IMG/VR virus record: IMGVR_UViG_3300046559_001153
Coordinates: 1-64,000 of that record
Length of the DNA stretch: 64,000 nt
Direction: 5' to 3' (one strand)
The notes beneath the pieces are model-generated. The model searched no databases and was not told the DNA's origin. It was given only the letters and a program-made list of their open reading frames with translations. The position numbers and the translations under genes are program-made. Positions 15,888 through 64,000 of this stretch are shown one piece after another. The stretch's first letter is position 1. Every line of letters begins with the position of its first letter.

Positions 15888-17675
15888 ATGGCCGTCGACT
15901 ATCCTGTTAATCCCGTCGCCATGGATCAGGCTCCACTTGGTGGCACGAACTTTCCGTTCGTGGACACCTCGACGGGTCTGGAATTCCTCATTGCCGATCT
16001 CAACCTGACTTACTCTGACGACGCGTCTGTCTTCGCTTTACCGTTCCGACTCGACTGGCTGCACGGCTTCGGCTCGATGCCCCACTCGGCACCGAGTTTC
16101 GCGCCGACGCCTACCCACGCTCAGGATGTCTTAATCCGTGACGCCAACGAGCAGGTAGTATTCAGCTCTGCTACTGGCAGCTTCAACGTGACAGTCTGGA
16201 ATTCCAGCCTGACTGTTCTGACCTGGAAAACAGCGATGGGGGTTTTGTCGCTCGTCTGGGTTACACAATGGCCCAGCGGACCGACGGCCCCGAACTATTT
16301 CACGAATATCGCCTTCACAAACGTCAAACTTGATTTGCGTACCTGCCAGCGTCTGCCGCCGCATGTTACGGGCATCAAAATCGGCAGCACGGTCTACACA
16401 GGCCAGATTCAGCTGGCGGCCGGGTATAACATCAATCTCGAAAAGGTTGAACAAACGGGCTTTGATAGCGGTATCCAGAATGTGACGGCCCTGCAGATTG
16501 ATGCCGTTCCAGGCGCGGGCCTGGGTCAATTTTCAGACTGCACAGAGGCCAATGTCGTACTACGCAGGGTTAATGGCCAGAGCCCTGACAGCAATGGGAA
16601 TCTGCAGTTGGATCTCGCCGGCTGTTATCGATTGCAACTGGCCGGAGCCATAACGTCGACCAGCCCGCGTGTGTTCAAAACGACACTCGGAACGTTGCAA
16701 TTCAGCAACGACTGCGCCCCATGCTGCGATTGCCAGGACTACGTCAACACCTATCGAGGCCTGACGAACGTTTGGAACCAGTTCTACCAGATAGACGTGG
16801 ACGCTCACCAGGCAAGAGACCAGTTGCAGGCAAACATCGCGAGATGGGATTCACAAAAATCCTGTCGTGAGGCAACAGCGGTTCGTTTGTTAATGGTCCC
16901 GTTCTGTCCATGCCTGATCGGTGTGGTCGGATCGTACTGCAATATGACTGGGACCTGCCTGACAAATGTGACAATGACGTTCAACTTTTCCGGGCTGACC
17001 GAGCTGTCGCCGGACGTGATCTGTGGCCAGACTGTGATCAATAACGATCAGCAGTACGCATTGGCCGGGTCGTGGCCTCAGTATACGGCTTACTTCGACA
17101 ACGTCAGCGCTGGACAACGAGTTTCGGTTCAATTTGCGGTGGAGGCAAAAAACTGTCAGTCGTCTGAGCCGTTGACTGGAACACTCGGTGTTGCGTTCGG
17201 GGCGTCGTCAGCCACACCGCCGCCATCCGCCAGTCAGTCGATCTTGATGCTGGCGCCGGATGGAATCACCGGAGATTGTTGCGATCCCGGCGCAACTTTA
17301 GGGACGTCGTCTACGTCCTCCACGACGTCTAGTACTACTACGACTACCACCACTACCACGACCACAACTACCACCACTACCACGACCACAACTACCACCA
17401 CTACTACGACCACGACCACCACTACTACGACCACGACTACCACCACTACTACGACCACGACCACCACTACTACCACGACTACCACCACTACTACGACCAC
17501 CACTGGCACGTCCGGTACCGGATCGCACGTATGCCAGGCCGTCTGCTCGTGGATGTGGATGGGCGATACATGGTCCTTGCAATCTGGTTGTGAGGTCGGT
17601 TGCGGATGCGCGCCACCTGGAGCTTGTCCGGGCTGCTTTGTCGGCCAATTAGCCGGGTCGGACTGCCACAATTAA
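15888..17675 (+). CDS. Cys-rich tail-associated paralog 2 with poly-Thr stalk
   Basis: NFPF; LAAGYNI; RVNGQSPDSNGNL; CAPCCDC; 57 Thr; Cys/Trp C-terminal module. Confidence 0.65.
   Translation: MAVDYPVNPVAMDQAPLGGTNFPFVDTSTGLEFLIADLNLTYSDDASVFALPFRLDWLHGFGSMPHSAPSFAPTPTHAQDVLIRDANEQVVFSSATGSFNVTVWNSSLTVLTWKTAMGVLSLVWVTQWPSGPTAPNYFTNIAFTNVKLDLRTCQRLPPHVTGIKIGSTVYTGQIQLAAGYNINLEKVEQTGFDSGIQNVTALQIDAVPGAGLGQFSDCTEANVVLRRVNGQSPDSNGNLQLDLAGCYRLQLAGAITSTSPRVFKTTLGTLQFSNDCAPCCDCQDYVNTYRGLTNVWNQFYQIDVDAHQARDQLQANIARWDSQKSCREATAVRLLMVPFCPCLIGVVGSYCNMTGTCLTNVTMTFNFSGLTELSPDVICGQTVINNDQQYALAGSWPQYTAYFDNVSAGQRVSVQFAVEAKNCQSSEPLTGTLGVAFGASSATPPPSASQSILMLAPDGITGDCCDPGATLGTSSTSSTTSSTTTTTTTTTTTTTTTTTTTTTTTTTTTTTTTTTTTTTTTTTTTTTTTTTTTTTTTTTGTSGTGSHVCQAVCSWMWMGDTWSLQSGCEVGCGCAPPGACPGCFVGQLAGSDCHN
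17334..17504 (+). repeat. (ACN)57 tract encoding 57 consecutive threonines
   Basis: 171 nt of mixed ACT/ACC/ACG/ACA codons in frame. Confidence 0.95.
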
Positions 17676-27649: not shown

Positions 27650-27812
27650 GGAGCGGCTCGTTAGCTTGCGAAAGCAATCTGACGGTTCTTCTCTAGGTGA
27701 TCCAGATTAAGACCCATCGGCCCGATTCGACTGATCTGGGTCACCTTCGTTCTGCTCACGAGGCATTGTCTGATCGTCCCCTGGCCGGGTAGTCAGACAA
27801 TGCCGGCGTGAG
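27650..27812 (+). ncRNA. Candidate structured RNA/leader with three hairpins
   Basis: Stems 27659-27684 (GAAA tetraloop), 27695-27746 (15 bp, two G.U), 27755-27812; non-coding gap. Confidence 0.55.
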
Positions 27813-28339: not shown

Positions 28340-28458
28340 GACCTCCCTTGGCCCACTGTGGCTGATGGGGATTATTGTGAACGGTTGTTGTTCATCCTTT
28401 GGGATGGCGACACCTGTTCCCCGTAATCCCCATCAGCCGCAGTGGGTTAAGGGTTGTC
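28340..28458 (+). ncRNA. Long rod-like RNA hairpin
   Basis: 31-bp arm 28345-28375 pairs with 28423-28453, all four non-WC pairs G.U; inner stems continue to a short loop. Confidence 0.6.
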
Positions 28459-49422: not shown

Positions 49423-49827
49423 ATGGGCGCTTCATTTATTTTGCATGCTTTACCTGATGTGAAAAACAAAACTGACGAACGACTGACTCAGATGACAGAG
49501 ATCATCGATAACCTGTCGCATGACGATCTGGCGATTCTCAGATACGACTGTGCCATACTCGACGAGGCTACAGACGATTCAATCAAAGATGCCCTGGTTG
49601 ACGACCTTGAGGATTACTGGATGCTGGAAGACTCTGGCAGGGAACACGGATCAATGCATCTGCCAGGCTGCAACCTGTCGTACGTGTTTACTGGTGGGTC
49701 TTCCTGGGGTGACCCACCAACTGAACTGAGTGACGGATTTGATTTGCTTAGTTCCTGCGGTCAAATCTTTGACCAGCTGAAGGAATGGGCTACCGCTGAC
49801 CTGATGGACAACTTTTCGAAAAGGTAG
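49423..49827 (+). CDS. Acidic hypothetical protein
   Basis: TGG.SWGD.PT motif; ends NFSKR. Confidence 0.65.
   Translation: MGASFILHALPDVKNKTDERLTQMTEIIDNLSHDDLAILRYDCAILDEATDDSIKDALVDDLEDYWMLEDSGREHGSMHLPGCNLSYVFTGGSSWGDPPTELSDGFDLLSSCGQIFDQLKEWATADLMDNFSKR
49809..49827. promoter_or_regulatory. Palindrome copy 6 (CAACTTTTCGAAAAGGTAG)
   Basis: Encodes NFSKR-stop, like copy 4. Confidence 0.5.
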
Positions 49828-51659: not shown

Positions 51660-52107
51660 AATCACCGTTTTGACGTGGGGAATTTTCGATTTGATTCATC
51701 CTGGCCATATGCGACTGCTTCGTAAGGCCCGCTGGTACGGCACTCGACTGGTTGTCGGGATCAACTCGGATGACTCTGTGCAGACGATCAGGATGTCAGA
51801 CAACCGGCCCGTTATGAACGAGTTGGAGCGGGCCTATGTGCTGCGGCACGTTGTCGGTGTTGACGAGGTGCGAATCTTTGATGCACCGAACGCGGCCGAT
51901 CTGATCTATTCTGTCCGTCCACGGTTTGCTGTTAAAGGCGGCAGCATTCCCGTGTCTGAAGAATTGGCTCTCAGCGACGTGCATGCCAAGTTCATTTATC
52001 TGCCCCCTTTGCCATCCCATCCGCATACTACCGAGCTCATCGGGCGAGCTTACGAGATTTACTGTGACGAACAAGGAATACCATGCCACCAAAGAAAGTT
52101 GCGTTGA
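51652..52107 (+). CDS. HxGH nucleotidyltransferase (RfaE/HldE domain II-like)
   Basis: GIFDLIHPGH, LVVGINSD.SV, RPV..E.ER, VD.V.IF, VKGG. Confidence 0.85.
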   Translation: MNEITVLTWGIFDLIHPGHMRLLRKARWYGTRLVVGINSDDSVQTIRMSDNRPVMNELERAYVLRHVVGVDEVRIFDAPNAADLIYSVRPRFAVKGGSIPVSEELALSDVHAKFIYLPPLPSHPHTTELIGRAYEIYCDEQGIPCHQRKLR

Positions 52108-53213
52108 TTTTTGCCGACTCTCATTTGGCTCAGGGCGCCTGGGTCAGCCGGGAGCCGATCAAGGGGGACAGCTACTTCGGATTTGAACAGATCATCGAGT
52201 TGGCCCTGGAACACAAAGTTCCTCTCATCGGTGCCGGCGATTTGATCGACACCAAACGGCCTGACCCTCGGACGATTGACGTCCTGCGTGTGGGATGTCA
52301 GAAACTGAAAGACGCTGAAATCCCGTTTCACTACATCATGGGCCAGCATGACCTGACGGATCCGCCGTGGTTCTCAGCTGTGCACGACTGGCCTCAGTTG
52401 ATCGAGCCGGACACATCGTTTATGAGCGGCTCTGTCGCTTTTGGAGGATTCTCCTGGCTGCCGTCTGACCAGGTTAATGGCCAGTTGGCCAAGATGATAA
52501 ATGTCGATGTGTTGATTCTCCATGAGGTCTGGGAAGAGTTCATGGGCGGCGGCCAGATCATTTGTGACGGCAGCCTGGTCCACACACCTGAGTCGGTCAA
52601 AGCTGTTTTCACCGGTGATTACCACAGGCACATGAAGAAGCAGGTGACTGGCGTAAAAGGAAATTCATTCCCAGTCTACTCGCCCGGCAGCACATGTCTG
52701 CAGTCGATCGATGAACCGCGGGAGAAGTCTGTTTACCTGCTGTACGCCGACATGTCAGTTAGACCACTTCCCTTGCTGTGTCGTCCGGCGATGACGATTA
52801 CAACGCCGATTGTCAGTGAAGCCGGGTTGGATGAATTCTGCGATACGATCAAGAGGCGAGCGGATACGATCAAACATGATGCGATGAACGACAAGGTCCC
52901 ATCGCATTTGTGCGAACCGTTGATCTACGTCGAGTACGCTCCGGACGTCACGAACATCGTGACCAGGCTTCGCAAGGCTGTGCCGTCGGTGGCCCACTTG
53001 TTCATGAAGCCTGTGTTCCGGGAATCAGAAGAACGGACTGCGCGTAAGGTAACTCGTGCCAAGGTGCTCAATAGCGGCCTGGACGGCGCGGTTGCCTCGC
53101 TGACTGTGGACGACGCCGGGCTCCGCGGAATGTGTCAGCAATTGTTGCTGGCCGACAATCCGGTGATCGAACTGCAAGCACTCAAGGAAACATTCTTTAA
53201 GAAAGGCGCGTGA
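52083..53213 (+). CDS. sbcD: SbcD/Mre11-like nuclease
   Basis: ADSHL, AGDLID, GQHD, LHE, GDYH, PGS. Confidence 0.85.
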   Translation: MPPKKVALIFADSHLAQGAWVSREPIKGDSYFGFEQIIELALEHKVPLIGAGDLIDTKRPDPRTIDVLRVGCQKLKDAEIPFHYIMGQHDLTDPPWFSAVHDWPQLIEPDTSFMSGSVAFGGFSWLPSDQVNGQLAKMINVDVLILHEVWEEFMGGGQIICDGSLVHTPESVKAVFTGDYHRHMKKQVTGVKGNSFPVYSPGSTCLQSIDEPREKSVYLLYADMSVRPLPLLCRPAMTITTPIVSEAGLDEFCDTIKRRADTIKHDAMNDKVPSHLCEPLIYVEYAPDVTNIVTRLRKAVPSVAHLFMKPVFRESEERTARKVTRAKVLNSGLDGAVASLTVDDAGLRGMCQQLLLADNPVIELQALKETFFKKGA

Positions 53214-53843: not shown

Positions 53844-55994
53844 ATGCTACTTAAGCGTTTGACACTTCGTAACATTGGCGTTCACCAGAAATTGGACATT
53901 ACGTTCAAGCCGGGGTTGGTTGGCATCTTCGGTGCCAACGGGGCCGGCAAGTCGACAATCACTAACTCTGCTTACGCTTGCCTGACTAATGACTTCTCCA
54001 GGTTTCCAGGTACTCGAGATCAAATTATCAATGATCAGTCCCAACCCGGCGATCTGGCAGAGATCGCTTGTGATCTGGATATCGATGGTGTCGAGTACTC
54101 ACTGAAACGTGAGCTCGGCCGTAGCAAGTGTCGCATGGAATTTACTCGCCCCGGGCAGCCGCGGCAGCGAATCGACAAAGACGGAGAATTCCAGCAAGCC
54201 CTCTTCAGCGCTTTGGGATTTCCGAGAGATGTGCTCGACAACTTCGTGTTCATCGACCAGTGGGAGACGTTCGCCTTTCTCAAAGCGACACCGGCCAAAC
54301 GAATGATGGCCTTTCACGGGTTGTGCAATACGGGCAAGGCTGAGCGGATCTGGGACGCGGTTGGTCAACGGATTGCCGCCGATGCCAGTCTTGTGGCTGA
54401 CGTACAGGACAACCTGGCTGAGTTTCGTAAACAGAAGGACGACACGGCGGCCGAGTATGTGAGACAACACACGGCGCTCGCCAGCATGTTGCAGGTCGGG
54501 CCTGTGGTTTTGGCTGATCTCCAGCAGAAGGTTAATGATCTGACGGCGTTGGCTAACCTGCGAGAGAATCTGCGTGAGGCTGAGGAAGCTTTGGCCAGTG
54601 CAGCTGCCTCTTCTCTGGCGGCTGCCACCAAATTGTTGCCGGTCAAGAAGGAGCGTGACCGGTTGCAGTCGGCTGTGGATGCAATCGACACGTCGACAGC
54701 TGAGAAGTGCGTGCCCATTCTGCAGGAGTACATCCTGCAGCAGCGGCAGGTCGCCGAGGACAAGCAGCAGATCGATGAGCTGGCTGAGTTCCTGGCTGAC
54801 ATGGCCCAGGAGCCTGAGCTGGAGCTGCCGGAAGGAATCACGTACGAGCCGATGGAAGAGATCAACAAGCGGTTGATCCTGAACAAGGCCGAACTGGCGA
54901 CGGCCAAGGCCTATGTGAAGAATTTCACAAAATCACCCAAGTGTCCCACCTGCGGTCAGGATGCGACTATGCTACTGGCTAAATACCAGAAGACTGTCGA
55001 CGAGTTGCCAGAGCAGATCCAGCAGGACGAAGAGACGGTCGAATGCATCGCTGATTTCAACGCTGACGTGGTCGTTTTCAGACAACAGGTGTCGGATGCC
55101 CAAGCTAAACTGGGCGCGTTGCGCACGCGTTTGGATAACGCAACGCTCGTCGTTCTAGACGATCCGCACTGGGTGACGGAACCGTTGGCCGCCCTCGAGG
55201 ATTTCAAGCTCACGATCGCCAGACGCAAGTTGGCTGAGGTTGCTCTGGCGACGTATGTCAAGTTGACGCTCACTCCAGCAGAGGCTAAGGCCAACGTGGC
55301 TAAGGGGGCTGTAGCTCCGGCAGAGAAACGCGTGGTTAAACTGACGGCCGATTTGCTCATCTACGGCGAAGCCAGTGCTGACGATTTGCCCGCGGTCAAA
55401 GAGGCATTGGCCACAGCAGTCGCCGCCAATAACAGATACACGACTGCTCATGCGTTGGCCAAAGCTGCCAAAACGACAGCTGAAAACGCTGCAGCGGCGT
55501 ACAAGCGGGCTAAGCAGTCCCTCGAGGATGCCCGCCAGCGTTCCCGGGTGGCCCGCTTGTGGCTTGAGCGGCTGGAAAAGGTCCGAGAGGTCTTTCACAG
55601 AGACGGAGCTCCCAAGCTGGTCGCCCAGAGCCGTCTGGAGAGCCTTGAGGACGATATCAACTTGTTCCTTGAGCCATTCGGCAGCCCGTTCACGGTCAGG
55701 GCGGGCGAGGATTTCAACTTGCTGGCTCAAGTCCCCGGGCACTCTGAACGAGAAGCCACCTGGCTTAGCGGGGGACAAAAGGTCGTCCTGTCGATGGCCT
55801 TCTTGCTGTCACAAAGCCCCGGCATGCTGGTGCTTGATGAGCCTGGCGCAGGCCTGGACACCGCGAACAGGGCCTACCTGCGTACGGCCTTGCAGCATTT
55901 CCAGTCAGTTGCGAAAAGTCGCGGGTTGCAGATCATCATGATCACTCATGACGAAAGCATGGAGAGCTCGTTCAACCAGGTCATTCAGTTGTAA
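53844..55994 (+). CDS. sbcC: SbcC/Rad50-like ATPase
   Basis: GANGAGKST, Q-loop, CPTCG zinc hook, LSGGQ, LVLDEP..GLD, ITHD. Confidence 0.92.
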   Translation: MLLKRLTLRNIGVHQKLDITFKPGLVGIFGANGAGKSTITNSAYACLTNDFSRFPGTRDQIINDQSQPGDLAEIACDLDIDGVEYSLKRELGRSKCRMEFTRPGQPRQRIDKDGEFQQALFSALGFPRDVLDNFVFIDQWETFAFLKATPAKRMMAFHGLCNTGKAERIWDAVGQRIAADASLVADVQDNLAEFRKQKDDTAAEYVRQHTALASMLQVGPVVLADLQQKVNDLTALANLRENLREAEEALASAAASSLAAATKLLPVKKERDRLQSAVDAIDTSTAEKCVPILQEYILQQRQVAEDKQQIDELAEFLADMAQEPELELPEGITYEPMEEINKRLILNKAELATAKAYVKNFTKSPKCPTCGQDATMLLAKYQKTVDELPEQIQQDEETVECIADFNADVVVFRQQVSDAQAKLGALRTRLDNATLVVLDDPHWVTEPLAALEDFKLTIARRKLAEVALATYVKLTLTPAEAKANVAKGAVAPAEKRVVKLTADLLIYGEASADDLPAVKEALATAVAANNRYTTAHALAKAAKTTAENAAAAYKRAKQSLEDARQRSRVARLWLERLEKVREVFHRDGAPKLVAQSRLESLEDDINLFLEPFGSPFTVRAGEDFNLLAQVPGHSEREATWLSGGQKVVLSMAFLLSQSPGMLVLDEPGAGLDTANRAYLRTALQHFQSVAKSRGLQIIMITHDESMESSFNQVIQL

Positions 55995-56050: not shown

Positions 56051-56950
56051 GTGGCTTACAGGGAGAAGTCCACAACGCCCGTCATTTCATCTGAGCTGAA
56101 AGTTGCCCGGTTCGTGGCAGAGCTGTCTGCCAGGGCGCCGTGCGAATACCGCGTGCTCGGCATGACGAGCAACGCGTCGCTGATTTGTCGCCTGGCTACG
56201 GCCGGTTACCGGGTGCGTGTCGGCACTCCGGGAGTCTGTCCCACAGGCGACGCGAGAAAACGACCAGAACTGGCTTTGCAGTGTGCTCTGTCAGTGGCCG
56301 GCCCGGCCAGCATCGGCGGCTGGCACCCGGTTGTCGATCACGATCTTCGAACTTACGAATTGATTTGCTCGATGCAGTGGTGTCGATCGCACGGCGGGCT
56401 TCGACCGACACGCTCGTTGGAGCGGCTGTTGCGTCGACATCCGGCCTGGTCAGCTTTGTCGTTTCCGACAACCGGTACTCTGACTGGCCGCGCTCGAGTT
56501 ATTGAGGCGCTTGTTGATCCGCGGTGGTATGTCGATCCGGCAAGAATGAATTCGGTGGCCAAGCTGCATTCGTATATGGGCTTGCACCCCGATCCGATAT
56601 TGTTGCTGTTGGGTTTCCCCGGCGCAAAATTCAAACCGACTGCGGCGTTTATGGACCGAGCATCGGCTGTGCTGGCTGCTTGGGGAGCCCATGGCCGACG
56701 TCCTGACGATTTGTCACAAATGAAAGACCCGCGTCATTTTCTGTGGAGAATCTATTCCGACTCGGCGGTTCCGCATCGCTGTCTGCGTGCGGCTCGCCGG
56801 TTCATAACGTTTGTCAACCAGGTCTGGCTGGACGCTATCACAAAAACGAGCGGCGACGGGATGCTCGACTTGAAACAGATGCTCAGGCGGGACTGCGACG
56901 TAGCTGCCTACAAAAACTATCTGGAAAGGAATGACTATGCCGGGAGATGA
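56051..56950 (+). CDS. Divergent IS110/Nop-domain-like protein (possible ATT start at 56021)
   Basis: L..HPAW..L, LVDPRWY..SVAKLHSYMGL.P, C-terminal H..LRA.RRFI.FV..VW. Confidence 0.5.
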   Translation: MAYREKSTTPVISSELKVARFVAELSARAPCEYRVLGMTSNASLICRLATAGYRVRVGTPGVCPTGDARKRPELALQCALSVAGPASIGGWHPVVDHDLRTYELICSMQWCRSHGGLRPTRSLERLLRRHPAWSALSFPTTGTLTGRARVIEALVDPRWYVDPARMNSVAKLHSYMGLHPDPILLLLGFPGAKFKPTAAFMDRASAVLAAWGAHGRRPDDLSQMKDPRHFLWRIYSDSAVPHRCLRAARRFITFVNQVWLDAITKTSGDGMLDLKQMLRRDCDVAAYKNYLERNDYAGR

Positions 56951-57188
56951 CGACTACGACGACTGGCCGAATGACGAAGACCGCGTGCCATCGATCGGCC
57001 ATCAGAATCTGGCCGCGTCTGTGATGCGGCTAGAATCGTCCTACCGCGATCTGGTTCACTTTACAGGCGGGATTATCGCTACACTGGCGATTGAACGAAA
57101 CCAGTCTGAATTTGCCAAGATTCCCGTGTTCCACGAGATGGCTAAGAAATGGGTGGAACGGTACCGGATTCAATTTAACGGGAGGTGA
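56931..57188 (+). CDS. Small hypothetical protein
   Basis: Acidic N-terminus; overlaps upstream stop. Confidence 0.55.
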   Translation: MTMPGDDDYDDWPNDEDRVPSIGHQNLAASVMRLESSYRDLVHFTGGIIATLAIERNQSEFAKIPVFHEMAKKWVERYRIQFNGR

Positions 57189-57190
57189 CC

Positions 57191-57355
57191 GTGGGCGCCG
57201 CGCGACACTTGAGTGATTTGGCTGATATTTGTGGGTTAACTAAAGAGGATTTTCTGGATTTGTGTATCGAGTACATTGACCGCCAGAAAGACGACGACGC
57301 TTTCCACGATTTTGTGCAGCAACAAACAGTGGCCTGGCTGGACGAAGAATCCTGA
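57191..57355 (+). CDS. 54-aa acidic protein (not in ORF track)
   Basis: GGAGGT SD, GTG start, TGATG coupling. Confidence 0.6.
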   Translation: MGAARHLSDLADICGLTKEDFLDLCIEYIDRQKDDDAFHDFVQQQTVAWLDEES

Positions 57356-57834
57356 TGAGAGAATTGACGATCACGATCCGCTTCTCACAGCCCAGTCTGG
57401 GAAACGTAAAACAGCCTGACGGGAGTTTTGCCTTTCCTCGAGGAGCTACACCGGTAGACGTGCTGTTTTTCGCCAGCTGGTGGAAAGCGTTGATTTGTTT
57501 TGCGGCTGATGCCGTTGGCAAACGCCAGGACGCCGTTCGCGAGATCCTCTGGGATCCTCGAATTGTCGGGGCACCTAAGACGGGCCCTCGTTATGGGTAC
57601 CGTCGTCGCCGCGGTGAACGGTTCATTGTGCATGAGCAGTTTGCTGTGGGCGACACTCTGTCTGTGCATTGCCTGGTTCCGACAGAGATTACTGACCCTG
57701 ATCTGCTTGAGTTGATGACAACGGCCGGAGCATACCGAGGCATTAGTCCGTTTCAGCCCGGCATTTTCGGACAGTTCGTTGTCGATAGAATCGAGAAAAA
57801 GGCCGGATTATCAAATCCGGCTGATTCAGCTTGA
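57355..57834 (+). CDS. Stand-alone RAMP/Cas7-like protein
   Basis: N-terminal strand TIRFSQPSLG, helix SWWKALI, HE.F.VG strand, L.ELM..AG.YRGISPF.PG.FG.F.V Gly-rich loop. Confidence 0.5.
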   Translation: MRELTITIRFSQPSLGNVKQPDGSFAFPRGATPVDVLFFASWWKALICFAADAVGKRQDAVREILWDPRIVGAPKTGPRYGYRRRRGERFIVHEQFAVGDTLSVHCLVPTEITDPDLLELMTTAGAYRGISPFQPGIFGQFVVDRIEKKAGLSNPADSA

Positions 57835-57883
57835 CCGCCATTCGCGGAAAGTTAAACTTGCCTCCCCCCATCAAGGAGTTCTC

Positions 57884-58225
57884 GTGGACTGGCTTATTGC
57901 CCACCTAATCGGTGACTATCTGATTCAAAACGATTGGATGGCGAGAAATAAAAAGACCAGCACAAGCCTGTGTCTGATTCATGTCATCTCGTACACGCTC
58001 GTAATGGCCTGTTTTACGCTGTGGCCGCCGACAGCTTTGTTGATCGTGGCAGTCACCCATTTTGCACAGGATCGAACTCAATTCGTCGCCTGGTACATGC
58101 GTGTGATGGGCCAGACTGAGTTCGCCAAACCACCACTGGCGCCGTGGTCGTGCATCATAGTCGACAACGTGCTCCACCTGGTGGTTCTTTATTGCATTTC
58201 GATTTCCCCGTTGGTACGCCCATGA
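57884..58225 (+). CDS. DUF3307 membrane protein
   Basis: AHLIGDYLIQNDWMA..K, H...YT, THF..D, DN.LH. Confidence 0.8.
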   Translation: MDWLIAHLIGDYLIQNDWMARNKKTSTSLCLIHVISYTLVMACFTLWPPTALLIVAVTHFAQDRTQFVAWYMRVMGQTEFAKPPLAPWSCIIVDNVLHLVVLYCISISPLVRP

Positions 58226-59673
58226 AAATCAATGTTTTGCGCCGTGGTCAGTGGATAGTGATCGACCCGACGACCCCGGAAATTCTGACTGTGTTGGATA
58301 AAGCGTTGACGTACACAAAGCGAGAGTTCCTCTACGGTCTCGACCGTAAGCGGGCTCTGGCTGATGGTCGACCGCCGCTTCAGCTTGTAGATCTCGCTTG
58401 TTACACGCTCGATCACAAACAACGGGTGGCATGCGCCTACGGTTTCTACCCTCGCATTCGAAAGTTGTTGCGCGAGCTGGGGCACGAGGTGAATCTGAGT
58501 AATCTGGCCCCGCACCCGCATCCAGAGATCTTCGAACCGGACTGGAGCAACGTGCTCTCGTTCACAGAACTGCGATACCGACAACAGGAATTTCTTGAGC
58601 TGCTGATCAATAAAGATCAAGGACGATTCGACTGTCCACCCGGGTTTGGCAAGACAATGTTGATCGCCCTGGCTGCCCGGCTGTTTCCGAAAGCCAAGAT
58701 CGATATCACGGCCGTGTCCGCGGATGTTTGCCGCAACATCTGTAGCGAGCTCGAAACGGCGTTGCCGAATGTTGGCTTGATTGGTGGCGGCAAAAAGCAA
58801 AAGGGTCACCGGGTGACTGTGTACGTGGCCAAGTCGTTGTGTCACAGCCCGGCGGATGCGGATATTCTTTTTGGCGACGAATGTCACCAGCTTCCGTGTG
58901 ACAGCTACATCGAGCATTTGACCCGATACCGCTACGCCAGGAAGTACGGCATGTCGGCCACACACGACATGCGATTGGACGGCCAGGACATGCGGGTTGA
59001 ATCGGTTTTCGGCCCGATCATCATGCAGCTGTCCTACCAGGAAGGCGAGGAGAACAAACTGGTTGTGCCTATCCGAGTCGAGTGGACAGACGTCGAAATG
59101 GATTACGACCCGTGCGCCGGAATGGACCAGGTTGAGAAGCTCCGACACGGAATCTGGCGAAACGATTATCGCAACTCGTTGATAGCGGCTGATGCTCGAC
59201 AACACCGGGCAGACGAACAAGTGCTGATCGTTGTTAACACGATCGATCACGCTGTCCATTTGAAACAGGTGTTGCCCGAGTTTACGTTGGTTTACGCGGA
59301 GAACGGCTTGGACGCCATTCATCGTCGCCGGTATACGAAGTGGGGGCTCATTCCGGAGAATGAGCCGTTGATGACCCTCGAGCGTCGCAGTAAGTTGCGG
59401 GTTAAATTTGAATCAGGTGAGTTGAAGAAAGTCATCGCGACCGGTGTGTGGTCGACGGGCGTTGACTTTCGTCAGTTGGAAGTCCTGATTCGAGCCGACG
59501 CCAGCGGTAGTCCGACGCTCGACACTCAGCTTCCTGGCCGTATCTCCAGGTTAAGCGCCGAGACCGGCAAGAACTGCGGGATCTTGCGAGACTACCGCGA
59601 TCAGTTCAACAAGACGTTTGCGCAGCGGGCCAAACGTCGTGAAGCCAATTATGCGGCTAATGGATGGGAGTAA
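58222..59673 (+). CDS. SF2 DNA helicase (UvsW/XPB-like)
   Basis: LRYRQ, PPGFGKT, DECH, MSAT, TGVD, Q.PGR.SR. Confidence 0.88.
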   Translation: MKINVLRRGQWIVIDPTTPEILTVLDKALTYTKREFLYGLDRKRALADGRPPLQLVDLACYTLDHKQRVACAYGFYPRIRKLLRELGHEVNLSNLAPHPHPEIFEPDWSNVLSFTELRYRQQEFLELLINKDQGRFDCPPGFGKTMLIALAARLFPKAKIDITAVSADVCRNICSELETALPNVGLIGGGKKQKGHRVTVYVAKSLCHSPADADILFGDECHQLPCDSYIEHLTRYRYARKYGMSATHDMRLDGQDMRVESVFGPIIMQLSYQEGEENKLVVPIRVEWTDVEMDYDPCAGMDQVEKLRHGIWRNDYRNSLIAADARQHRADEQVLIVVNTIDHAVHLKQVLPEFTLVYAENGLDAIHRRRYTKWGLIPENEPLMTLERRSKLRVKFESGELKKVIATGVWSTGVDFRQLEVLIRADASGSPTLDTQLPGRISRLSAETGKNCGILRDYRDQFNKTFAQRAKRREANYAANGWE

Positions 59674-59675
59674 GT

Positions 59676-60341
59676 ATGCCACTGGTTAATGCGAGATTGG
59701 TGGAATTGACCGCCGGTGTCGTCCGTGCCACGTACATTCAAGAACGCAGTCTGATTGACGGTAAATCGTACATCCCGTCGGTTAAGTGGGATGGTAATGG
59801 GCACGGTAGATCGGCTGATTCGATCTGGCAGAAGATCGCACAGAAGCTGTTGCTTTACGGAGTGGAGCCTGGCAATTTTGTTCGACATTATTTCGAGCGT
59901 ATCGCCGTGGTTGGCGGAAACCGGATAGCGTATTACCCGACTGATCTTTTGAATGAGAGCCTGATCAAGGCATATCGCGATGACTGGCGTCCTATCGCGA
60001 TTGCTGATCTGCGTGACTCGTTCAATTTTCAGACGAACATAGCGAGAATCGCCTTCCTGACGTATCAGGGTCTGCGAAAGGTTGACGCTATCGAGGCGAC
60101 CAAGGCCGTACTGTGGGATCTCGATGTGGAGCTGACGCCCCTGTTTCGTTTCTGTTGGGCTGTCAGTATGAAACGAAAATCGTTTCGCAAGATTCGCGAC
60201 AACTATCTCTTATTGGCCGCGATCCAATACAGCAGCGACAGCGAGTGTTACGACGAGGTTTGGGGAGACCGGATTCCCCAGTCTTTTAAGACCTATGTAA
60301 TCAAGACTCTCGGTTTAGCGTGCAAAGGACGAAAGTTATGA
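59676..60341 (+). CDS. Hypothetical replication-region protein
   Basis: KWDG, LTPLFRFC, Y...W motifs; between helicases. Confidence 0.65.
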   Translation: MPLVNARLVELTAGVVRATYIQERSLIDGKSYIPSVKWDGNGHGRSADSIWQKIAQKLLLYGVEPGNFVRHYFERIAVVGGNRIAYYPTDLLNESLIKAYRDDWRPIAIADLRDSFNFQTNIARIAFLTYQGLRKVDAIEATKAVLWDLDVELTPLFRFCWAVSMKRKSFRKIRDNYLLLAAIQYSSDSECYDEVWGDRIPQSFKTYVIKTLGLACKGRKL

Positions 60342-61969
60342 CAGGGATGAAATTCAAAAAGAGAGAAATTGATACGACTGTCGCGACGCTGAGCGAGGCG
60401 GAAGTCGAACTGATGATGAAGACGGCCATTCGACGCGAAGATGTGTTCACGACGGTTCGTGGCCAGCTGACGGCCGAGATTCTGCACAATTATTCGGAGA
60501 TCCTGTTTGTCGTGTGGCTGGTACTTGAGACGCACTACACGAAACACAAGCAGATGCCCAAGTTCCAGACTCTCAGGGCCGAGCTGAAGGCACACTGTTC
60601 CAGACACAAAGAAGGCTCGACCGGGAACCTGGGAATTGACGAACTACGTCAGGCCATTTTGTTTTGTCGAGAAGCCTACTCGATCAAGCTGGCCGATTTT
60701 GATCCATTGTGGGCGATCGGAAAAATTCGATCGTTCCTGGAGGAGCAGCTTCTTGCCAAAGCTAAGAAGTCCCTCGAGGAAGAAGACCGACGCCCCGGCA
60801 ATCTGCCTGATTTTCTCAAGCAGATGCATGTGGCGTCGGAAGCGATTTCCAGCCTGCAGGGCGACAGCGCCGAACTGCCATTCCCGATTGGCTGGGAACC
60901 CCGCCCCTTGCCGGTGACATCGACCGGCATCGATTTTCTGGACAAGTTCATGGGAGGCGGGGATGCTCTGGGAGAGATCGCCGTGACGATTGGTGCAACT
61001 GGCGGATGTAAGACGACGCTGGCCAATCAGATTGCCTGCAGGCGTGCCCAGTATTACTGGACGCAGGCGAGGGATAACCCGGATGCTCCGAAGCAGATGG
61101 TCTACATGGTGCCTTATGAATCGCCGGTTGAGCCGGAACTTCGACAGAGGATTCTGATGTGCCACGCTGTTGTTCGTCGCGACGAGATGGAAGAGAAGGG
61201 TTGGGCCGGTTTGTCGACGTCTTCAACACCTAAGCCTTATGAGCTCGAGATGTTCAGAGGGGCGATCGCCAGTGGACATTTTCGTGGGGAACGCGAGCGT
61301 ATTGAGGATGCGTCAACCATTCTTAATTCGTCGTTACGATTCATCGACTGCAGTGGGGCTGACCGCGCTCACCCTAACCGCGGCGGCGGATTTGTTGACG
61401 AGCTGGCGGCGATTCTTCAAAATGAACTGCGGACCTACCCTGATCGACAGATCGGCACGGTCATTATCGATTACGCCGGCGTGATGGTCGCAAAACATCT
61501 CGCGGCAACTGGTCAGGATTACAGTCAGCTCCGCCATCATCTCGCCAACTTGCCCCTGCAACTTCGCGATCGAATCGCCTTGCCGATGAATTGTTCGATC
61601 TGGCTGATGCATCAGCTGGCTGGCGCCGCCAACAAGAAGTCGGCGTGGGCGAACATGCATCACTCCGATTCGCAGGAATGCAAGACACTCGCAGATAACT
61701 GCAGTTTCGCGTTTGTTCTTGGAAACATCGATGCTAACGGGCATTGTGTTATCCGCTGCACGAAGCATCGTCGTCAGCCCCGTCACGAACAGGAGATCAT
61801 TAAAGTGGAAGGACAACTAGCCCGAGTCCGCAGTACTCAGGGACAATACTACTACGACGCCCGACGTGCCCAGATTGTCAGTTACGCCGACGCCCAGAAA
61901 ACCATGTCAGCAGAAGAAACACGCCCAGCTCAACGTGGCAGTCTGGGAGTACCCGACTATGAGGGGTAA
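60338..61969 (+). CDS. dnaB: DnaB-like (SF4) replicative helicase
   Basis: STGI.FLD..MGGG, GATGGCKTT, IIDY, HQL, KHR. Confidence 0.78.
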   Translation: MTGMKFKKREIDTTVATLSEAEVELMMKTAIRREDVFTTVRGQLTAEILHNYSEILFVVWLVLETHYTKHKQMPKFQTLRAELKAHCSRHKEGSTGNLGIDELRQAILFCREAYSIKLADFDPLWAIGKIRSFLEEQLLAKAKKSLEEEDRRPGNLPDFLKQMHVASEAISSLQGDSAELPFPIGWEPRPLPVTSTGIDFLDKFMGGGDALGEIAVTIGATGGCKTTLANQIACRRAQYYWTQARDNPDAPKQMVYMVPYESPVEPELRQRILMCHAVVRRDEMEEKGWAGLSTSSTPKPYELEMFRGAIASGHFRGERERIEDASTILNSSLRFIDCSGADRAHPNRGGGFVDELAAILQNELRTYPDRQIGTVIIDYAGVMVAKHLAATGQDYSQLRHHLANLPLQLRDRIALPMNCSIWLMHQLAGAANKKSAWANMHHSDSQECKTLADNCSFAFVLGNIDANGHCVIRCTKHRRQPRHEQEIIKVEGQLARVRSTQGQYYYDARRAQIVSYADAQKTMSAEETRPAQRGSLGVPDYEG

Positions 61970-63086
61970 TCTGAAAGCGACCGGCCGCGTTAAGTTGAAA
62001 TCATCTGGCCGTCTGGAACCGGGACAGGTGATTAACCCTAAATTGTACAGGGCTCTCGAGAAACGTTTTGGCGAGGTGCGTGTAGGCTCGCCAGGGCTCG
62101 AGCTGATCGGCAAAACTGAGCGAATTACGACAGCGTCCGGCCGCGATCATCCTGTCTTGTCGGTGAGGTACTGGGGGGAGCATTACGCTGTCTGCTGCCC
62201 CAAATGCGGAGATACCAAACATAGGCTCTATTTCAGCCAGCGATTTGGTGTCAGCGACAAGCACGGGCTCAATAAGAATCTCGTGTATTGCTTCAACGAG
62301 AACTGCTATGCCGAGTGGGAAGACCGAGAACACCTGTACTCTTTGTTGTTCAACTTCAATATCGGTTCTCAGAAAATTACGGATTTGCGTAAAGGCAAGA
62401 CTCTGACTGAGGTCGAGCTGAAGGTGGTGATCCCCGGCATCACTTACAAGTTGGAAGATCTCGATGAAGATCATGCTTCTCGACGATACATTGAAAGCCG
62501 CGGTTTCGATCCAAACACCCTGTCAAAAATCTACGGGGTGTCTTATTGCGCGTTTGCCCAGGATTACCGCGTGCACAGGCGTATCTTGATCCCCGTCTAC
62601 AATGACGGGAACCTTGTCGGCTGGCAGGCTCGCTATGTGGGTGAACTGGATTGGAAGGGTGAGAATAAGTCAGTCAAGAAGTACCATACCTGCCCGGGCA
62701 TGAGGAAGTCTCTTTGCCTGTACAACCTGGACAGGGCTAAGCACTATCCGACCGGGGTAGTTGTTGAAGGTGTGACTGATGTGTGGTCCTTCGGTCCAAT
62801 GGCCGTCTCTGGTTTCGGAGACAAGATCTCCCCAGGTCAAGTCGACTTGCTCGTTAAACATTTTCAGAACAAGTCGTTGTTGATTGTGTTGGATAGTGAG
62901 CCGAGCGCGTTGGAAAAAGCGCACGAAGTCGCGGAAGAACTGCGTGGCCGAATCGTGAAGGGCGTAGCCGTGATAACGTTGCCCGACGGATCTGATCCGG
63001 CTGATCTGGATCGACGAGTTCTGTGGCAGATCGCTAAGAAACAGGCGGCAGAGCAGGGTGTGTTCTGCTCATTCAAACGGGCGTAA
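61959..63086 (+). CDS. dnaG: DnaG-type primase
   Basis: CPKC..H..C..C zinc finger, YIESRG, RILIP, GWQAR, KY, VVEGVTD, DPAD. Confidence 0.85.
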   Translation: MRGNLKATGRVKLKSSGRLEPGQVINPKLYRALEKRFGEVRVGSPGLELIGKTERITTASGRDHPVLSVRYWGEHYAVCCPKCGDTKHRLYFSQRFGVSDKHGLNKNLVYCFNENCYAEWEDREHLYSLLFNFNIGSQKITDLRKGKTLTEVELKVVIPGITYKLEDLDEDHASRRYIESRGFDPNTLSKIYGVSYCAFAQDYRVHRRILIPVYNDGNLVGWQARYVGELDWKGENKSVKKYHTCPGMRKSLCLYNLDRAKHYPTGVVVEGVTDVWSFGPMAVSGFGDKISPGQVDLLVKHFQNKSLLIVLDSEPSALEKAHEVAEELRGRIVKGVAVITLPDGSDPADLDRRVLWQIAKKQAAEQGVFCSFKRA

Positions 63087-63121: not shown

Positions 63122-64000
63122 ATGGCTGATCGTGTGCTGATTTCTGATCTGTCCGCGTCGAAAGACAATACTAAAAAACAGCTGAGCAAGCAGGCAGTTG
63201 CCGGTTTGCGTGTCTATCCATTTACTGCCCCGGGGATGCCGAAACCGGGTCCGTCTTTTGTCGCCGCCGCCCGACAGTGGGTTGGAGAGCCCGACGAGCC
63301 TCCGCATGTCCTGTCGAAAGATCAGATCGTTAGGAGGAAAGAAGCGTACGATAAAGCTGTGAATGAACAACTCGCTCAGTTTTATGAGGACGCGTTATAC
63401 AATCCTTTCGATATGCCCGTCGGCTTCAGGCACAAGGATCCGCCATTCCGTGAAGCGCGTTTTGGGTCTAGCCATTTCGTCCCTGGCAGTTTATGGGATA
63501 CGTCTAATATGGGCGACAGGCATAACATGCCTCCGGGCGGATATGGCCCGCGTCGTGCTCGAATCATGGTTATCGGAAAGACGCCTAACCAGGATGAGGT
63601 CAGGCATAACCGTAATCTGGTTGGCGGACCCGGTAGCTATCTTCTCGAGATGCTTCGTCAGTACGGTATTGATGACATGGCCAGCTGGTATGTGACCAGC
63701 CTGGTGAAATTTATCCCGCCGAGGGATAAGACGGCTCTCGCAGCTGAGTGGGTTCAAGACTGCGCTCCGCTGTTGCAGATGGAATTAAGAATCGTTCGAC
63801 CGGAGATCATTCTTTGTCTCGGCGCTGATGCAGTGAAGGCTGTGTTTGGTAAGGGAGTCAAGTTGGCCGAGGTTGAAGGTCGTGATGTTCCCCTTACGTA
63901 CAATTACCATTTATCCGATAGTCATTATCCATTGCGCCACACGGCGAAAGTTTTCTCAGTCGTGCACCCTGCTTTCGTCATGCGTACTCCGGCCGAGGGG
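63122..64000 (+). CDS. Family-4 UDG-like domain, probably N-terminus of phage DNA polymerase (3'-truncated; not in ORF track)
   Basis: AAGGAG SD; my translation gives IMVIGKTPNQDE..LVGGPG, WYVTSLVK, CAPLL..EL.IVRP.IILCLG..A, HPA. Confidence 0.75.
   Translation, partial: MADRVLISDLSASKDNTKKQLSKQAVAGLRVYPFTAPGMPKPGPSFVAAARQWVGEPDEPPHVLSKDQIVRRKEAYDKAVNEQLAQFYEDALYNPFDMPVGFRHKDPPFREARFGSSHFVPGSLWDTSNMGDRHNMPPGGYGPRRARIMVIGKTPNQDEVRHNRNLVGGPGSYLLEMLRQYGIDDMASWYVTSLVKFIPPRDKTALAAEWVQDCAPLLQMELRIVRPEIILCLGADAVKAVFGKGVKLAEVEGRDVPLTYNYHLSDSHYPLRHTAKVFSVVHPAFVMRTPAEG

What the first reader, a model, noticed from the sequence alone, without database searches (positions are those of the whole stretch)
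57355..57834. Minimal stand-alone Cas7/RAMP-like protein 400 bp from the Nop-like gene, with no cas genes or array
Seen: 159 aa with RAMP-like order of elements and a terminal Gly-rich loop (AGAYRGISPFQPGIFGQFVV). It lies in the run sbcC, Nop-like, two small acidic ORFs, RAMP-like, DUF3307, SF2 helicase, DnaB, DnaG, Pol. Established: Cas7-group RAMPs polymerise on guide RNA. Inference: two folds from different RNA-guided lineages side by side in a replication operon may form an undescribed RNP for R-loop priming, recombination, gene silencing or anti-CRISPR, possibly with the phage RNase H and the orphan RNAs at 27.6-28.5 kb or 49.9-50.1 kb.
Basis: partly seen in the sequence, partly recalled or inferred. 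Interest (0 to 1): 0.8.

Follow-up and report, generated by a model that had tools for sequence, protein, structure and literature searches.

The report
Stand-alone RAMP in phage replication module
A jumbo soil phage encodes a small protein with the fold of the CRISPR guide-RNA-binding subunits (Cas7/Vipr-like); it has no CRISPR genes or guide-RNA array nearby, and related phages keep it fixed next to a DNA helicase inside their replication genes, so this fold may also have a housekeeping job.

Summary
ORF 57355-57834 (159 aa) is a real, constrained gene, and its high-confidence model (pLDDT 92.6) is a minimal RAMP: RRM core, basic thumb-like hairpin and Gly-rich loop. All significant PDB matches are CRISPR RAMPs, with Cas7-group subunits on top.

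It belongs to an unnamed family of about 150 sequence clusters. All loci with readable context are phage-like, on contigs up to 224 kb. No curated Cas or RAMP model hits the family. Its only recurrent sequence relative is the recently described phage Vipr protein (VIPR systems), and only through the C-terminal helix/G-loop motif.

It does not meet the definition of VIPR:
- No pentanucleotide vrRNA, TIGR or CRISPR-like array lies in the 64-kb window or within 10 kb in eight related loci. The SUSP1 positive control was always detected.
- The GGY-contact residues aligned in the G-loop are not conserved.
- The alpha-bundle is missing.

Instead, the gene lies directly upstream of an XPB-like SF2 helicase in 9 of 9 loci, inside an SbcCD - X - RAMP - helicase - Y - DnaB - DnaG - PolA module.

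Linkage to the neighbour called "Nop-like" is conserved in 6 of 8 loci, but a Nop fold is unproven. The "orphan RNA" regions are a CsrA locus and operator-like repeats.

Most likely it is a strand-binding partner of the helicase. The mechanism is inferred, not shown.

The parts
57355..57834 (+). Stand-alone minimal RAMP (Cas7/Vipr-like), 159 aa: RRM core, basic thumb-like hairpin (about residues 72-96, tip YRRRRGER), Gly-rich loop (128-140). H93-E94 is nearly invariant.
   Evidence: ORF; AF2 pLDDT 92.6; Foldseek PDB and BFVD; family alignment; purifying selection
58222..59673 (+). XPB-like SF2 helicase/translocase (483 aa from the internal ATG; the 509-aa GTG ORF starts at 58144). It is the invariant downstream partner of the RAMP gene.
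   Evidence: Pfam ResIII + Helicase_C, PHROG 16; PDB XPBII E 1.2e-8; adjacent to the RAMP gene in 9 of 9 loci
56051..56950 (+). It is a conserved family of unknown fold with motifs SLGGWH, HPAW, DPRWYVD and NFLWRRW. It lies upstream of the RAMP gene in 6 of 8 loci.
   Evidence: BLASTP synteny; alignment A4; no Pfam or PDB sequence hit; AF2 pLDDT 56 and non-significant TasR top hit
56931..57188 (+). Small acidic ORF (85 aa) between X and the RAMP gene. No homolog was detected in the other seven loci compared.
57185..57355 (+). Small acidic ORF (56 aa). Its stop overlaps the RAMP start codon. It is conserved only in the close relative L001.
57779..58225 (+). DUF3307 membrane protein, inserted between the RAMP and helicase genes only in this phage. 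A promoter-like site lies at 57831-57858.
   Evidence: Pfam 6.5e-11, PHROG 2470; absent in L001 and all other loci; promoter scan
59664..60341 (+). Gene Y, 225 aa, a conserved gene between the helicase and DnaB. The only available model is low-confidence and its nearest structures are helical repeats. It is a possible helicase loader or adaptor, and no RAMP fold was detected.
   Evidence: synteny; Atlas pLDDT 0.37, nearest structures helical repeat proteins at TM below 0.5; PADLOC Cas5_IIIg E 0.0027 judged spurious
60320..61969 (+). DnaB-type replicative helicase
   Evidence: synteny with genes carrying DnaB_C/AAA_25 hits
61866..63086 (+). DnaG-type primase
   Evidence: NCBIfam dnaG 1.6e-8
63122..64000 (+). 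5' part of the UDG-family-4 / DNA polymerase A fusion gene, which runs off the window
   Evidence: L007 15768-19043
52083..53213 (+). SbcD/Mre11-like nuclease
   Evidence: synteny with Metallophos genes
53844..55994 (+). SbcC/Rad50-like ATPase
   Evidence: synteny with SMC_N/AAA_23 genes

Best explanation
The ORF encodes a genuine minimal RAMP: an RRM core, a basic thumb-like hairpin and a glycine-rich loop. It is built like a Cas7 backbone subunit and is distantly related to the phage Vipr protein.

It is the founding example of an unnamed family found on large phage contigs. There it is a fixed part of the recombination/replication module SbcD - SbcC - X - RAMP - XPB-like SF2 helicase - Y - DnaB - DnaG - PolA. 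It always lies directly upstream of the helicase gene and often overlaps it.

The most likely mechanism is inferred, not shown. The protein binds a single strand of nucleic acid (RNA or ssDNA) along helix 1, the G-loop and the thumb, probably cooperatively as other RAMPs do. In this way it presents or stabilises a strand-separated intermediate (R-loop, D-loop or fork) for the helicase it is co-translated with. X and Y would serve as further subunits or loaders that hand over to DnaB and primase.

It is not an array-programmed interference effector of the CRISPR, VIPR or TIGR kind. At the least, no such array is encoded near it.
For: Shown:
- AF2 model: pLDDT 92.6 with beta-alpha-beta-beta-alpha-beta topology.
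- Foldseek PDB: 93 hits at E<=1e-3. The listed ones are all CRISPR RAMPs, led by type VII Cas7, Csm3, Cmr4/Cmr1, Csf2 and Cas7-11, at TM 0.5-0.62.
- BFVD: the top hit is a viral 'RAMP superfamily protein'. The ESM Atlas structure search gave RAMP, Csm4 and Cas5 clusters.
- Family: 152 cluster representatives, nearly all 140-200 aa, with no recognisable fused domains. The G-loop glycines, S131-P132 and H93-E94 are conserved.
- Selection: strong purifying selection.
- Synteny: the RAMP gene abuts the SF2 helicase in the window and in L001, L002, L003, L004/5, L008, L009, L010/11 and L012, at 25-40% protein identity. Start/stop codons overlap in several loci.
- Helicase type: nearest to XPBII.
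- Arrays: none was found by four methods, while the SUSP1 control was detected.

Inferred: strand binding and cooperativity rest on established knowledge of Cas7 and Vipr filaments (bioRxiv 10.64898/2026.04.26.720927). The functional tie to the helicase rests on conserved adjacency.
Against: - There is no experimental or expression evidence; no RNA run was listed.
- No ligand has been identified.
- About 160 kb of the 224-kb contig was not visible, so a distant guide locus cannot be excluded.
- RAMP folds can be used for other purposes.
- X and Y have no assigned fold.
- One distant relative (L003) has a promoter plus an 8-nt tandem-repeat leader directly upstream of its RAMP gene. This could mean a specific repeat-RNA ligand after all.
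- The published VIPR types include helicase-associated ones whose details I could not read.
Confidence: 0.55

Rival explanations
1. It is a bona fide VIPR system, for example one of the published helicase-associated types. The RAMP would be the Vipr protein and the SF2 helicase its vap gene. The vrRNA would be encoded elsewhere in the 224-kb genome, or be too degenerate to recognise, and would guide silencing of competing mobile elements.
For: - phrog_4652, the SUSP1 Vipr family (E 1.4e-96), is the only PHROG that family members recurrently hit: 9 of 94 members, best E 1.8e-4, and the target itself at E 0.093.
- hhalign of the family against type II Vipr gives 94.7% probability, and the PDB profile search hits 36pp 'SUSP1 Vipr protein' at E 0.018.
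- The gene is phage-encoded, small and stand-alone.
- VIPR types III-V carry nuclease or helicase accessory genes, degenerate repeats exist, and solo vrRNAs can be encoded away from vipr (bioRxiv 10.64898/2026.04.26.720920 and 10.64898/2026.10.15.759431).
Against: - The similarity covers only about 40 C-terminal columns, the generic RAMP helix/G-loop/strand motif.
- No tract of YNNGG>=4, NNNGG>=5, YNNNG>=6 or NNNNG>=9 units exceeds chance in the window or within 10 kb in eight related loci. The same scans recover all four SUSP1 vrRNAs.
- The loci are tightly packed and lack the long flanking intergenic regions typical of VIPR.
- The SUSP1 GGY-contact residues D177, W178 and R179 align to P132, F133 and Q134.
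- There is no alpha-helical bundle between beta1 and alpha1. In Vipr this bundle carries K33 and R39, and alanine substitutions abolish (K33A) or reduce (R39A) silencing.
- The gene is a conserved core member of a replication module, not an accessory locus.
Confidence: 0.2
2. It is an RRM-fold subunit that does not bind nucleic acid. It would act as a structural or regulatory adaptor of the XPB-like helicase, the way partner proteins modulate XPB in archaea, and its RAMP resemblance would be a relic.
For: - Adjacency and translational coupling to the helicase are invariant.
- No ligand RNA was found.
- The net charge is only mildly basic (counted from the sequence).
Against: - The elements that contact RNA in RAMPs are the best-conserved parts of the family: the G-loop glycines, and R79 (nearly invariant) within the arginine-rich hairpin.
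- The thumb-like hairpin is strongly basic (YRRRRGER).
Confidence: 0.12
3. It is an RNA-binding translational or autogenous regulator of the replication operon, comparable to T4 gp32 or RegA acting on mRNA leaders.
For: In L003 the RAMP-helicase operon has its own promoter and a leader with about nine tandem, U-poor units (ACGAGGCA/ACAAGGCA) predicted to be unstructured. That is a plausible platform for cooperative binding.
Against: - Only one locus has such a leader.
- In most loci the gene has no leader at all and is coupled to the upstream gene.
- The repeat could equally bind the phage CsrA or ribosomes.
Confidence: 0.08
4. It is an anti-CRISPR decoy: a Cas7 mimic that poisons host Class 1 effector complexes or soaks up crRNA.
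For: It has a Cas7-like fold in a phage that shows no cas genes.
Against: - It is conserved at a fixed position in a core replication module across phages that share only 25-40% identity, and it is translationally coupled to a helicase. Anti-CRISPR genes typically sit in variable accessory loci (general knowledge).
- It has no sequence similarity to any cellular Cas7 family.
Confidence: 0.03

Closest known systems
Vipr protein of VIPR systems (Viral Interference Programmable Repeat; SUSP1 Vipr, PDB 36pp, phrog_4652; bioRxiv 10.64898/2026.04.26.720920 and .720927)
   Same: - Both are small, stand-alone, phage-encoded RAMPs with an RRM core, thumb and G-loop, and no cas genes or CRISPR array.
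- Vipr is the nearest relative detectable by sequence profile.
- Some VIPR types are also paired with a helicase gene.
   Different: - The similarity is limited to the C-terminal helix/G-loop/strand motif.
- It is 159 aa against about 190 aa and has no alpha-helical bundle.
- The GGY-contact residues aligned in the G-loop are not conserved.
- No pentanucleotide-repeat vrRNA and no long flanking intergenic regions are present.
- The gene sits as a conserved core member of a recombination/replication module instead of a two-gene accessory locus.
Cas7-group backbone subunits of Class 1 CRISPR effectors (type VII Cas7, Csm3, Cmr4, Csf2)
   Same: These are the best structural matches (Foldseek E about 2e-6, TM 0.5-0.62). 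They share the order of RRM strands and helices, a hairpin in the thumb position and the G-loop.
   Different: - No curated Cas7/RAMP sequence model is matched, apart from one weak Csf2 hit in 94 members.
- It is smaller than most of them.
- No Cas5, Cas6, large or small subunit, Cas10, adaptation genes or array are present.
- The Csm3/Cmr4 catalytic aspartate context was not established.
Type IV-A CRISPR-Cas (Csf2 backbone plus DinG helicase) and type I Cascade-Cas3
   Same: A Cas7-like protein is encoded together with an SF2-type helicase. Csf2 of the type IV-A3 complex with DinG is among the structural hits (8s35_L).
   Different: - The helicase here is XPB-like, not DinG or Cas3.
- There is no Csf1, Csf3, Cas6 or array.
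- The context is replication, not plasmid or defence.
TIGR-Tas systems (Nop-domain Tas proteins with tandem interspaced guide RNA arrays; PMC12045711)
   Same: This bears only on neighbour X. TasR (294 aa) is the top-ranked but non-significant structural match of a poor model. TIGR-Tas systems are also largely phage-encoded.
   Different: - X matches no Nop domain by sequence in five orthologs.
- No 36-nt-period dual-repeat array is present.
- The match (E 0.22, TM 0.27) is not evidence.
Archaeal XPB-Bax1 helicase-partner pairs
   Same: An XPB-type SF2 helicase is encoded next to a dedicated partner protein. This rests on the PDB hit to XPBII chains of entries 6p4f and 5tnu plus general knowledge.
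   Different: The partner here has a RAMP fold, and no nuclease domain is recognisable. The resemblance concerns gene pairing only and was not tested structurally.

Membership tests
RAMP superfamily (structural) | RRM/ferredoxin-like core with beta-alpha-beta-beta-alpha-beta order | tested here: met
   AF2 pLDDT 92.6, element order; Foldseek hits to CRISPR RAMPs at E down to 1.9e-6
RAMP superfamily (structural) | Glycine-rich loop between alpha2 and beta4 | tested here: met
   Residues 128-140; G129 and G139 invariant and G125 nearly invariant in 94 homologs
RAMP superfamily (structural) | Thumb hairpin inserted between beta2 and beta3 | tested here: inconclusive
   The model has short strands at 75-77 and 93-96 with a basic tip (YRRRRGER), but the tip has pLDDT 64-83. 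No coordinates were available to superpose it.
Cas7 families (Csm3/Cmr4/Csf2/Cas7 sequence models) | Match to a curated Cas7/RAMP profile (Pfam RAMPs, NCBIfam, PADLOC) | tested here: not met
   0 of 94 members in Pfam and NCBIfam; 1 of 94 weakly to typeIV_Cas7 (E 0.0015) in PADLOC
Cas7 families (Csm3/Cmr4/Csf2/Cas7 sequence models) | Encoded with other effector-complex genes and a CRISPR array | tested here: not met
   No cas hits in the neighbours beyond generic helicase matches; no array
VIPR system | Minimal phage-encoded RAMP homologous to Vipr | tested here: inconclusive
   hhalign 94.7% over 40 C-terminal columns only; 9 of 94 members hit phrog_4652 weakly; cross-HMM scores of 20-27 bits
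VIPR system | vrRNA: tandem YNNGG (or NNNGG, YNNNG, NNNNG) repeats with a 3' tail, usually flanking vipr | tested here: not met
   None above chance in the 64-kb window or within 10 kb in eight related loci. All four SUSP1 vrRNAs are recovered by the same scans. The remaining 160 kb of the genome was not visible.
VIPR system | GGY-recognition residues (SUSP1 H17, R138, D177, W178, R179) | tested here: not met
   Aligned G-loop positions are P132, F133 and Q134, and S131-P132 is nearly invariant. The H17 equivalent appears to be N17 by eye only.
VIPR system | Alpha-helical bundle that cradles the target strand (K33, R39) | tested here: not met
   No helix between beta1 (2-10) and alpha1 (40-54) in the model
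VIPR system | Adjacent accessory (vap) gene acting on DNA | tested here: inconclusive
   An SF2 helicase is always adjacent. Whether it corresponds to a published vap helicase could not be read from the text.
TIGR-Tas (for neighbour X) | Nop domain | tested here: not met
   No Pfam hit in five orthologs and no PDB profile hit. By structure only a non-significant TasR top hit from a pLDDT-56 model, which leaves the fold itself unresolved.
TIGR-Tas (for neighbour X) | Adjacent dual-repeat or stem-loop TIGR array (36-nt units) | tested here: not met
   Lag autocorrelation over lags 4-100 and TRF found nothing. Stem-loop arrays without conserved repeats could escape these scans.

The most novel reading that the evidence does not exclude
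A second lineage of viral stand-alone RAMPs works in genome replication or recombination instead of interference. The protein polymerises on an RNA, either a transcript or a dedicated repeat RNA such as the 8-nt array in the L003 leader. It then forms or stabilises an R-loop that the co-encoded XPB-like helicase opens, so that DnaB and primase can load. This would be RNA-guided origin firing or replication restart in jumbo phages. It would make a housekeeping RNP a candidate ancestor or sibling of Vipr and the CRISPR Cas7 backbone.
Probability: 0.15. Interest if true: 0.9.

Novelty: new variant of a known kind. Interest (0 to 1): 0.66.

Why it matters
RAMPs were long known only as CRISPR effector subunits. 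In 2026 the phage Vipr proteins were proposed as their ancestors, working with pentanucleotide-repeat guide RNAs in conflicts between viruses.

This family extends that picture:
- It is a further, even smaller viral RAMP lineage with no recognisable guide array.
- It is conserved as a core gene of the recombination/replication module of large phages.
- It is hard-wired to an XPB-like helicase.

If it acts on replication or recombination intermediates, the RAMP fold has a role in viral DNA metabolism outside defence and counter-defence. That bears directly on where RNA-guided effector backbones came from, and it offers a very small strand-binding module to study. If it turns out to use a distant or unconventional guide RNA, it would broaden the VIPR concept to a helicase-coupled form linked to replication.

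Tried and rejected
- Pfam, PHROG, PADLOC and NCBIfam on the target gave nothing usable.
- The word-indexed homolog search found only two close hits. With the profile it found nine.
- tblastn and blastn against GenBank phages found nothing.
- Rfam gave no match in the window or in seven loci. There are no tRNAs in the window.
- I suspected Y (225 aa) of being a Cas5 because of a PADLOC hit at E 0.0027. I dropped this: the Atlas search gave only weak helical-repeat matches from a low-confidence model.
- I suspected X of being Nop/Tas-like. There is no sequence support, the five-sequence AF2 model is poor, and the TasR hit is not significant.
- C-terminal extensions of longer family members carry no known domain.
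- Expression could not be tested: no RNA run was listed, only DNA metagenomes.
- I did not walk the remaining 160 kb of the contig.
- Which published VIPR type carries the helicase could not be read. The figures and supplements are not held.
Full report
**1. The observation**

ORF 57355-57834 (+) encodes 159 aa and contains the quoted Gly-rich stretch at residues 124-143. Its ATG overlaps the stop of the preceding small ORF (TGATG).

It is a real gene. Against a 75%-identical ortholog on an independent contig (L001), non-synonymous divergence is 0.146 while synonymous sites are saturated at 0.78. An exhaustive HMMER search of 1.84 billion cluster representatives found 152 relatives, 104 of them at E<=1e-10. 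Nearly all are 140-200 aa and match over their full length.

The window is the first 64 kb of a 224,270-bp IMG/VR viral contig, so this is a jumbo phage. The phage recurs in at least 20 soil and rhizosphere DNA metagenomes.

**2. The fold**

No Pfam, PHROG, PADLOC or NCBIfam model matches the protein.

With a 94-sequence alignment (A1), AlphaFold2 gives a confident model (pLDDT 92.6, pTM 0.86). Its elements run:
- beta1 at 2-10
- alpha1 at 40-54
- beta2 at 65-71
- a hairpin-like excursion at 72-96, whose arginine-rich tip (YRRRRGER) is less confident
- beta3 at 101-108
- alpha2 at 114-127
- a Gly-rich loop at 128-140
- beta4 at 141-148

Foldseek against the PDB returns 93 matches at E<=1e-3, and every one of the 50 listed is a CRISPR RAMP. 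The list is led by type VII Cas7, Csm3, Cmr4/Cmr1, Csf2 and Cas7-11, with TM 0.5-0.62 normalised to the query. In the viral structure library the top hit is itself named a RAMP superfamily protein. The ESM Atlas structure search independently returned RAMP, Csm4, Cas5 and Cas6 clusters, after three clusters of unnamed viral proteins.

The conserved positions are the loop glycines (G125, G129, G139), S131-P132, F10, L15-G16, R79, P109 and an H93-E94 pair of unknown role.

**3. Relation to known families**

No curated Cas7 or RAMP sequence model detects any of the 94 members, apart from one weak Csf2 hit.

The profile of the family does hit one solved structure, 36pp 'SUSP1 Vipr protein' (E 0.018). 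This led to the 2026 description of VIPR systems. These are phage-encoded minimal RAMPs (Vipr) that polymerise on vrRNAs made of 9-16 YNNGG units plus a 3' tail, usually with one accessory gene (vap). They silence competing mobile elements (bioRxiv 10.64898/2026.04.26.720920; structures in 10.64898/2026.04.26.720927).

I retrieved the SUSP1 locus (L006), built a type II Vipr alignment (A3) and compared profiles:
- hhalign gives 94.7% probability, but over only 40 C-terminal columns: alpha2, the G-loop and beta4.
- Reciprocal HMM searches give 20-27 bits, mostly over the same stretch.
- phrog_4652 is the Vipr family (E 1.4e-96). It is the only PHROG that members of this family repeatedly touch: 9 of 94 members, best E 1.8e-4, and the target itself at E 0.093.

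So Vipr is the nearest sequence relative, but a distant one.

**4. Test of VIPR membership**

The defining partner, the vrRNA, is absent near the gene. I used four methods:
- the paper's own criterion (at least four YNNGG units) and its degenerate variants, as regular expressions with shuffled controls
- a motif-free column-conservation scan for periods 4-8
- lag autocorrelation for lags 4-100
- TRF at permissive settings

Nothing exceeds chance in the 64-kb window or within 10 kb of the gene in eight related loci. The only periodic signals are coding repeats. The same scans recover all four SUSP1 vrRNAs.

The loci are tightly packed and lack the long intergenic flanks typical of VIPR.

At the residue level, the SUSP1 G-loop contacts to the GGY motif (D177, W178, R179) align to P132, F133 and Q134. 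The model also has no helix where Vipr carries its alpha-bundle. In Vipr, K33A abolishes and R39A reduces silencing.

VIPR membership is therefore not met on the features I could test. One caveat is that about 160 kb of this genome is out of view. Another is that the published helicase-associated types could not be inspected.

**5. Genomic context**

This is the most informative result. Contexts obtained for diverse family members (24-75% identity to the target) show the same module on phage contigs of 105-224 kb:

SbcD - (two small genes) - SbcC - X (about 300 aa) - RAMP - SF2 helicase (about 490 aa) - Y (about 240 aa) - DnaB - DnaG - (one gene) - UDG/PolA fusion.

- **Helicase.** The RAMP gene lies directly upstream of the helicase gene in all nine independent loci. 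Start and stop codons overlap in several of them. The helicase is nearest to archaeal XPBII (E 1.2e-8).
- **Gene X.** It precedes the RAMP gene in six of eight loci with upstream context (by BLASTP in five; in L012 judged from gene size and position). In L003 it is replaced by a promoter and a repeat leader, and in L010 by two small genes and a promoter.
- **DUF3307 and the 85-aa acidic ORF.** These were found only in this phage. DUF3307 has a promoter-like site of its own.
- **Gene Y.** Its only available model is low-confidence and its nearest structures are helical repeats, so the Cas5 hit in PADLOC is unsupported.

**6. Neighbour X and the 'orphan RNAs'**

X is a well-conserved family with motifs SLGGWH, HPAW, DPRWYVD and NFLWRRW. 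It has no Pfam match, Nop included, in five orthologs, and no PDB profile hit.

Its five-sequence AlphaFold model is poor (pLDDT 56). The top-ranked PDB chain is TasR, a Nop-domain RNA-guided nuclease of similar length, but at E 0.22 and TM 0.27 this is not evidence (PMC12045711 for TIGR-Tas). No 36-nt-period array is present.

The 27.6-28.5 kb region contains a CsrA gene (Pfam 3.8e-14) flanked by long hairpins.

The 49.9-50.15 kb region contains four copies of a GAAC-N3-GTTC-centred motif in the intergenic region that precedes the module. A search with the 18-nt consensus found three matches where 0.06 are expected by chance. This looks like operator or iteron sites, not an RNA.

**7. Mechanism**

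What is shown:
- a Cas7/Vipr-like RAMP fold
- conservation of the elements that bind RNA in RAMPs
- strong purifying selection
- an invariant, often translationally coupled pairing with an XPB-like helicase inside a recombination/replication module

What is inferred: the protein binds a single strand (RNA or ssDNA), probably cooperatively, and acts with the helicase, X and Y on strand-separated intermediates that feed DnaB and primase.

I rate this at 0.55. The fold and context parts are much firmer than the mechanistic part.

The rivals, with my confidence in each:
- a true VIPR system with a distant or unrecognisable guide (0.2)
- a helicase adaptor that does not bind nucleic acid (0.12)
- an mRNA-leader regulator (0.08)
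- an anti-CRISPR decoy (0.03)

One unexplained lead keeps the RNA question open. In L003 the RAMP-helicase operon has a near-consensus promoter followed by about nine tandem copies of an 8-nt, U-poor unit (ACGAGGCA/ACAAGGCA) predicted to be unstructured. No other locus has anything similar.

**8. Verdict**

The thing is a new variant of a kind that has just become known: stand-alone viral RAMPs. It is distinguished by its replication-module context, its fixed helicase partner, its smaller size and the lack of a repeat guide RNA nearby.

It is of real interest to people working on the origin of RNA-guided effectors. However, the function rests on inference and needs biochemistry.

Noticed in passing
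L003:2035-2241 (Logan contig, 116 kb): Directly upstream of the RAMP homolog, where other phages have gene X, lies a TTGACA-17-TACACT promoter. It is followed by about nine tandem 8-9-nt units (ACAAGGAAA, ACAAGGCA, ACGAGGCAA ... ACGAGGATA). The tract is U-poor and predicted to be unstructured. TRF reports period 8 and 7.9 copies. It could be a RAMP-binding or CsrA-binding platform, or a set of ribosome standby sites. It is unique among the loci examined.
   Followed up: partly
window:28085-28288 (+), with flanks 27750-27810 and 28340-28450: A phage-encoded CsrA homolog (Pfam CsrA, E 3.8e-14). It is flanked by structured non-coding stretches: a perfect 12-bp hairpin upstream and an inverted repeat of about 23 bp downstream. 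A relative (L004) also carries a CsrA gene near the module.
   Followed up: partly
window:49937-50145: Four copies of ATAGAACnAAGTTC (palindromic core GAAC-N3-GTTC), spaced 63, 81 and 49 nt apart. They lie in the 390-nt intergenic region just upstream of the recombination/replication module. A search with the 18-nt consensus found 3 matches against 0.06 expected by chance. They look like operator or iteron (origin) sites.
   Followed up: partly
window:49837-49900: Two copies of GTKGGYCTGGTTT, 17 nt apart, right after the stop of ORF 49423-49827. A GC-rich hairpin follows that looks like a terminator.
   Followed up: no
window:57779-58225 and 57831-57858: The DUF3307 membrane-protein gene is inserted between the RAMP and helicase genes only in this phage, and a promoter-like site (TTGACC-16-TAAACT) lies just upstream of its conserved part. 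This is a moron-like insertion that splits an otherwise invariant gene pair.
   Followed up: partly
window:63122-64000 and L007:15768-19043: The DNA polymerase A carries an N-terminal family-4 uracil-DNA-glycosylase-like domain (NCBIfam UDG_fam4, E 3e-21). It also gives a weak hit to the aminoadenine polymerase DpoZ model (E 1.8e-7, far below its cut-off). The UDG/PolA fusion is conserved across the related phages.
   Followed up: no
window:17311-17503: A coding tandem repeat (period 21-24/45, ACC/ACT-rich, so Thr-rich) inside the 595-aa ORF 15888-17675. It is the only strong periodic signal in the window.
   Followed up: no
window:48763-49413 (+): An RNase H-like gene (Pfam RNase_H, E 1.7e-5, just under the curated cut-off) about 0.4 kb upstream of the operator-like repeats.
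   Followed up: no
window:51619-52107 (+): A stand-alone cytidylyltransferase-like gene (162 aa). In relatives it corresponds to the C-terminal part of a bifunctional PfkB/CTP_transf_like protein of about 500 aa at the same position (L002, L004, L008, L009).
   Followed up: no
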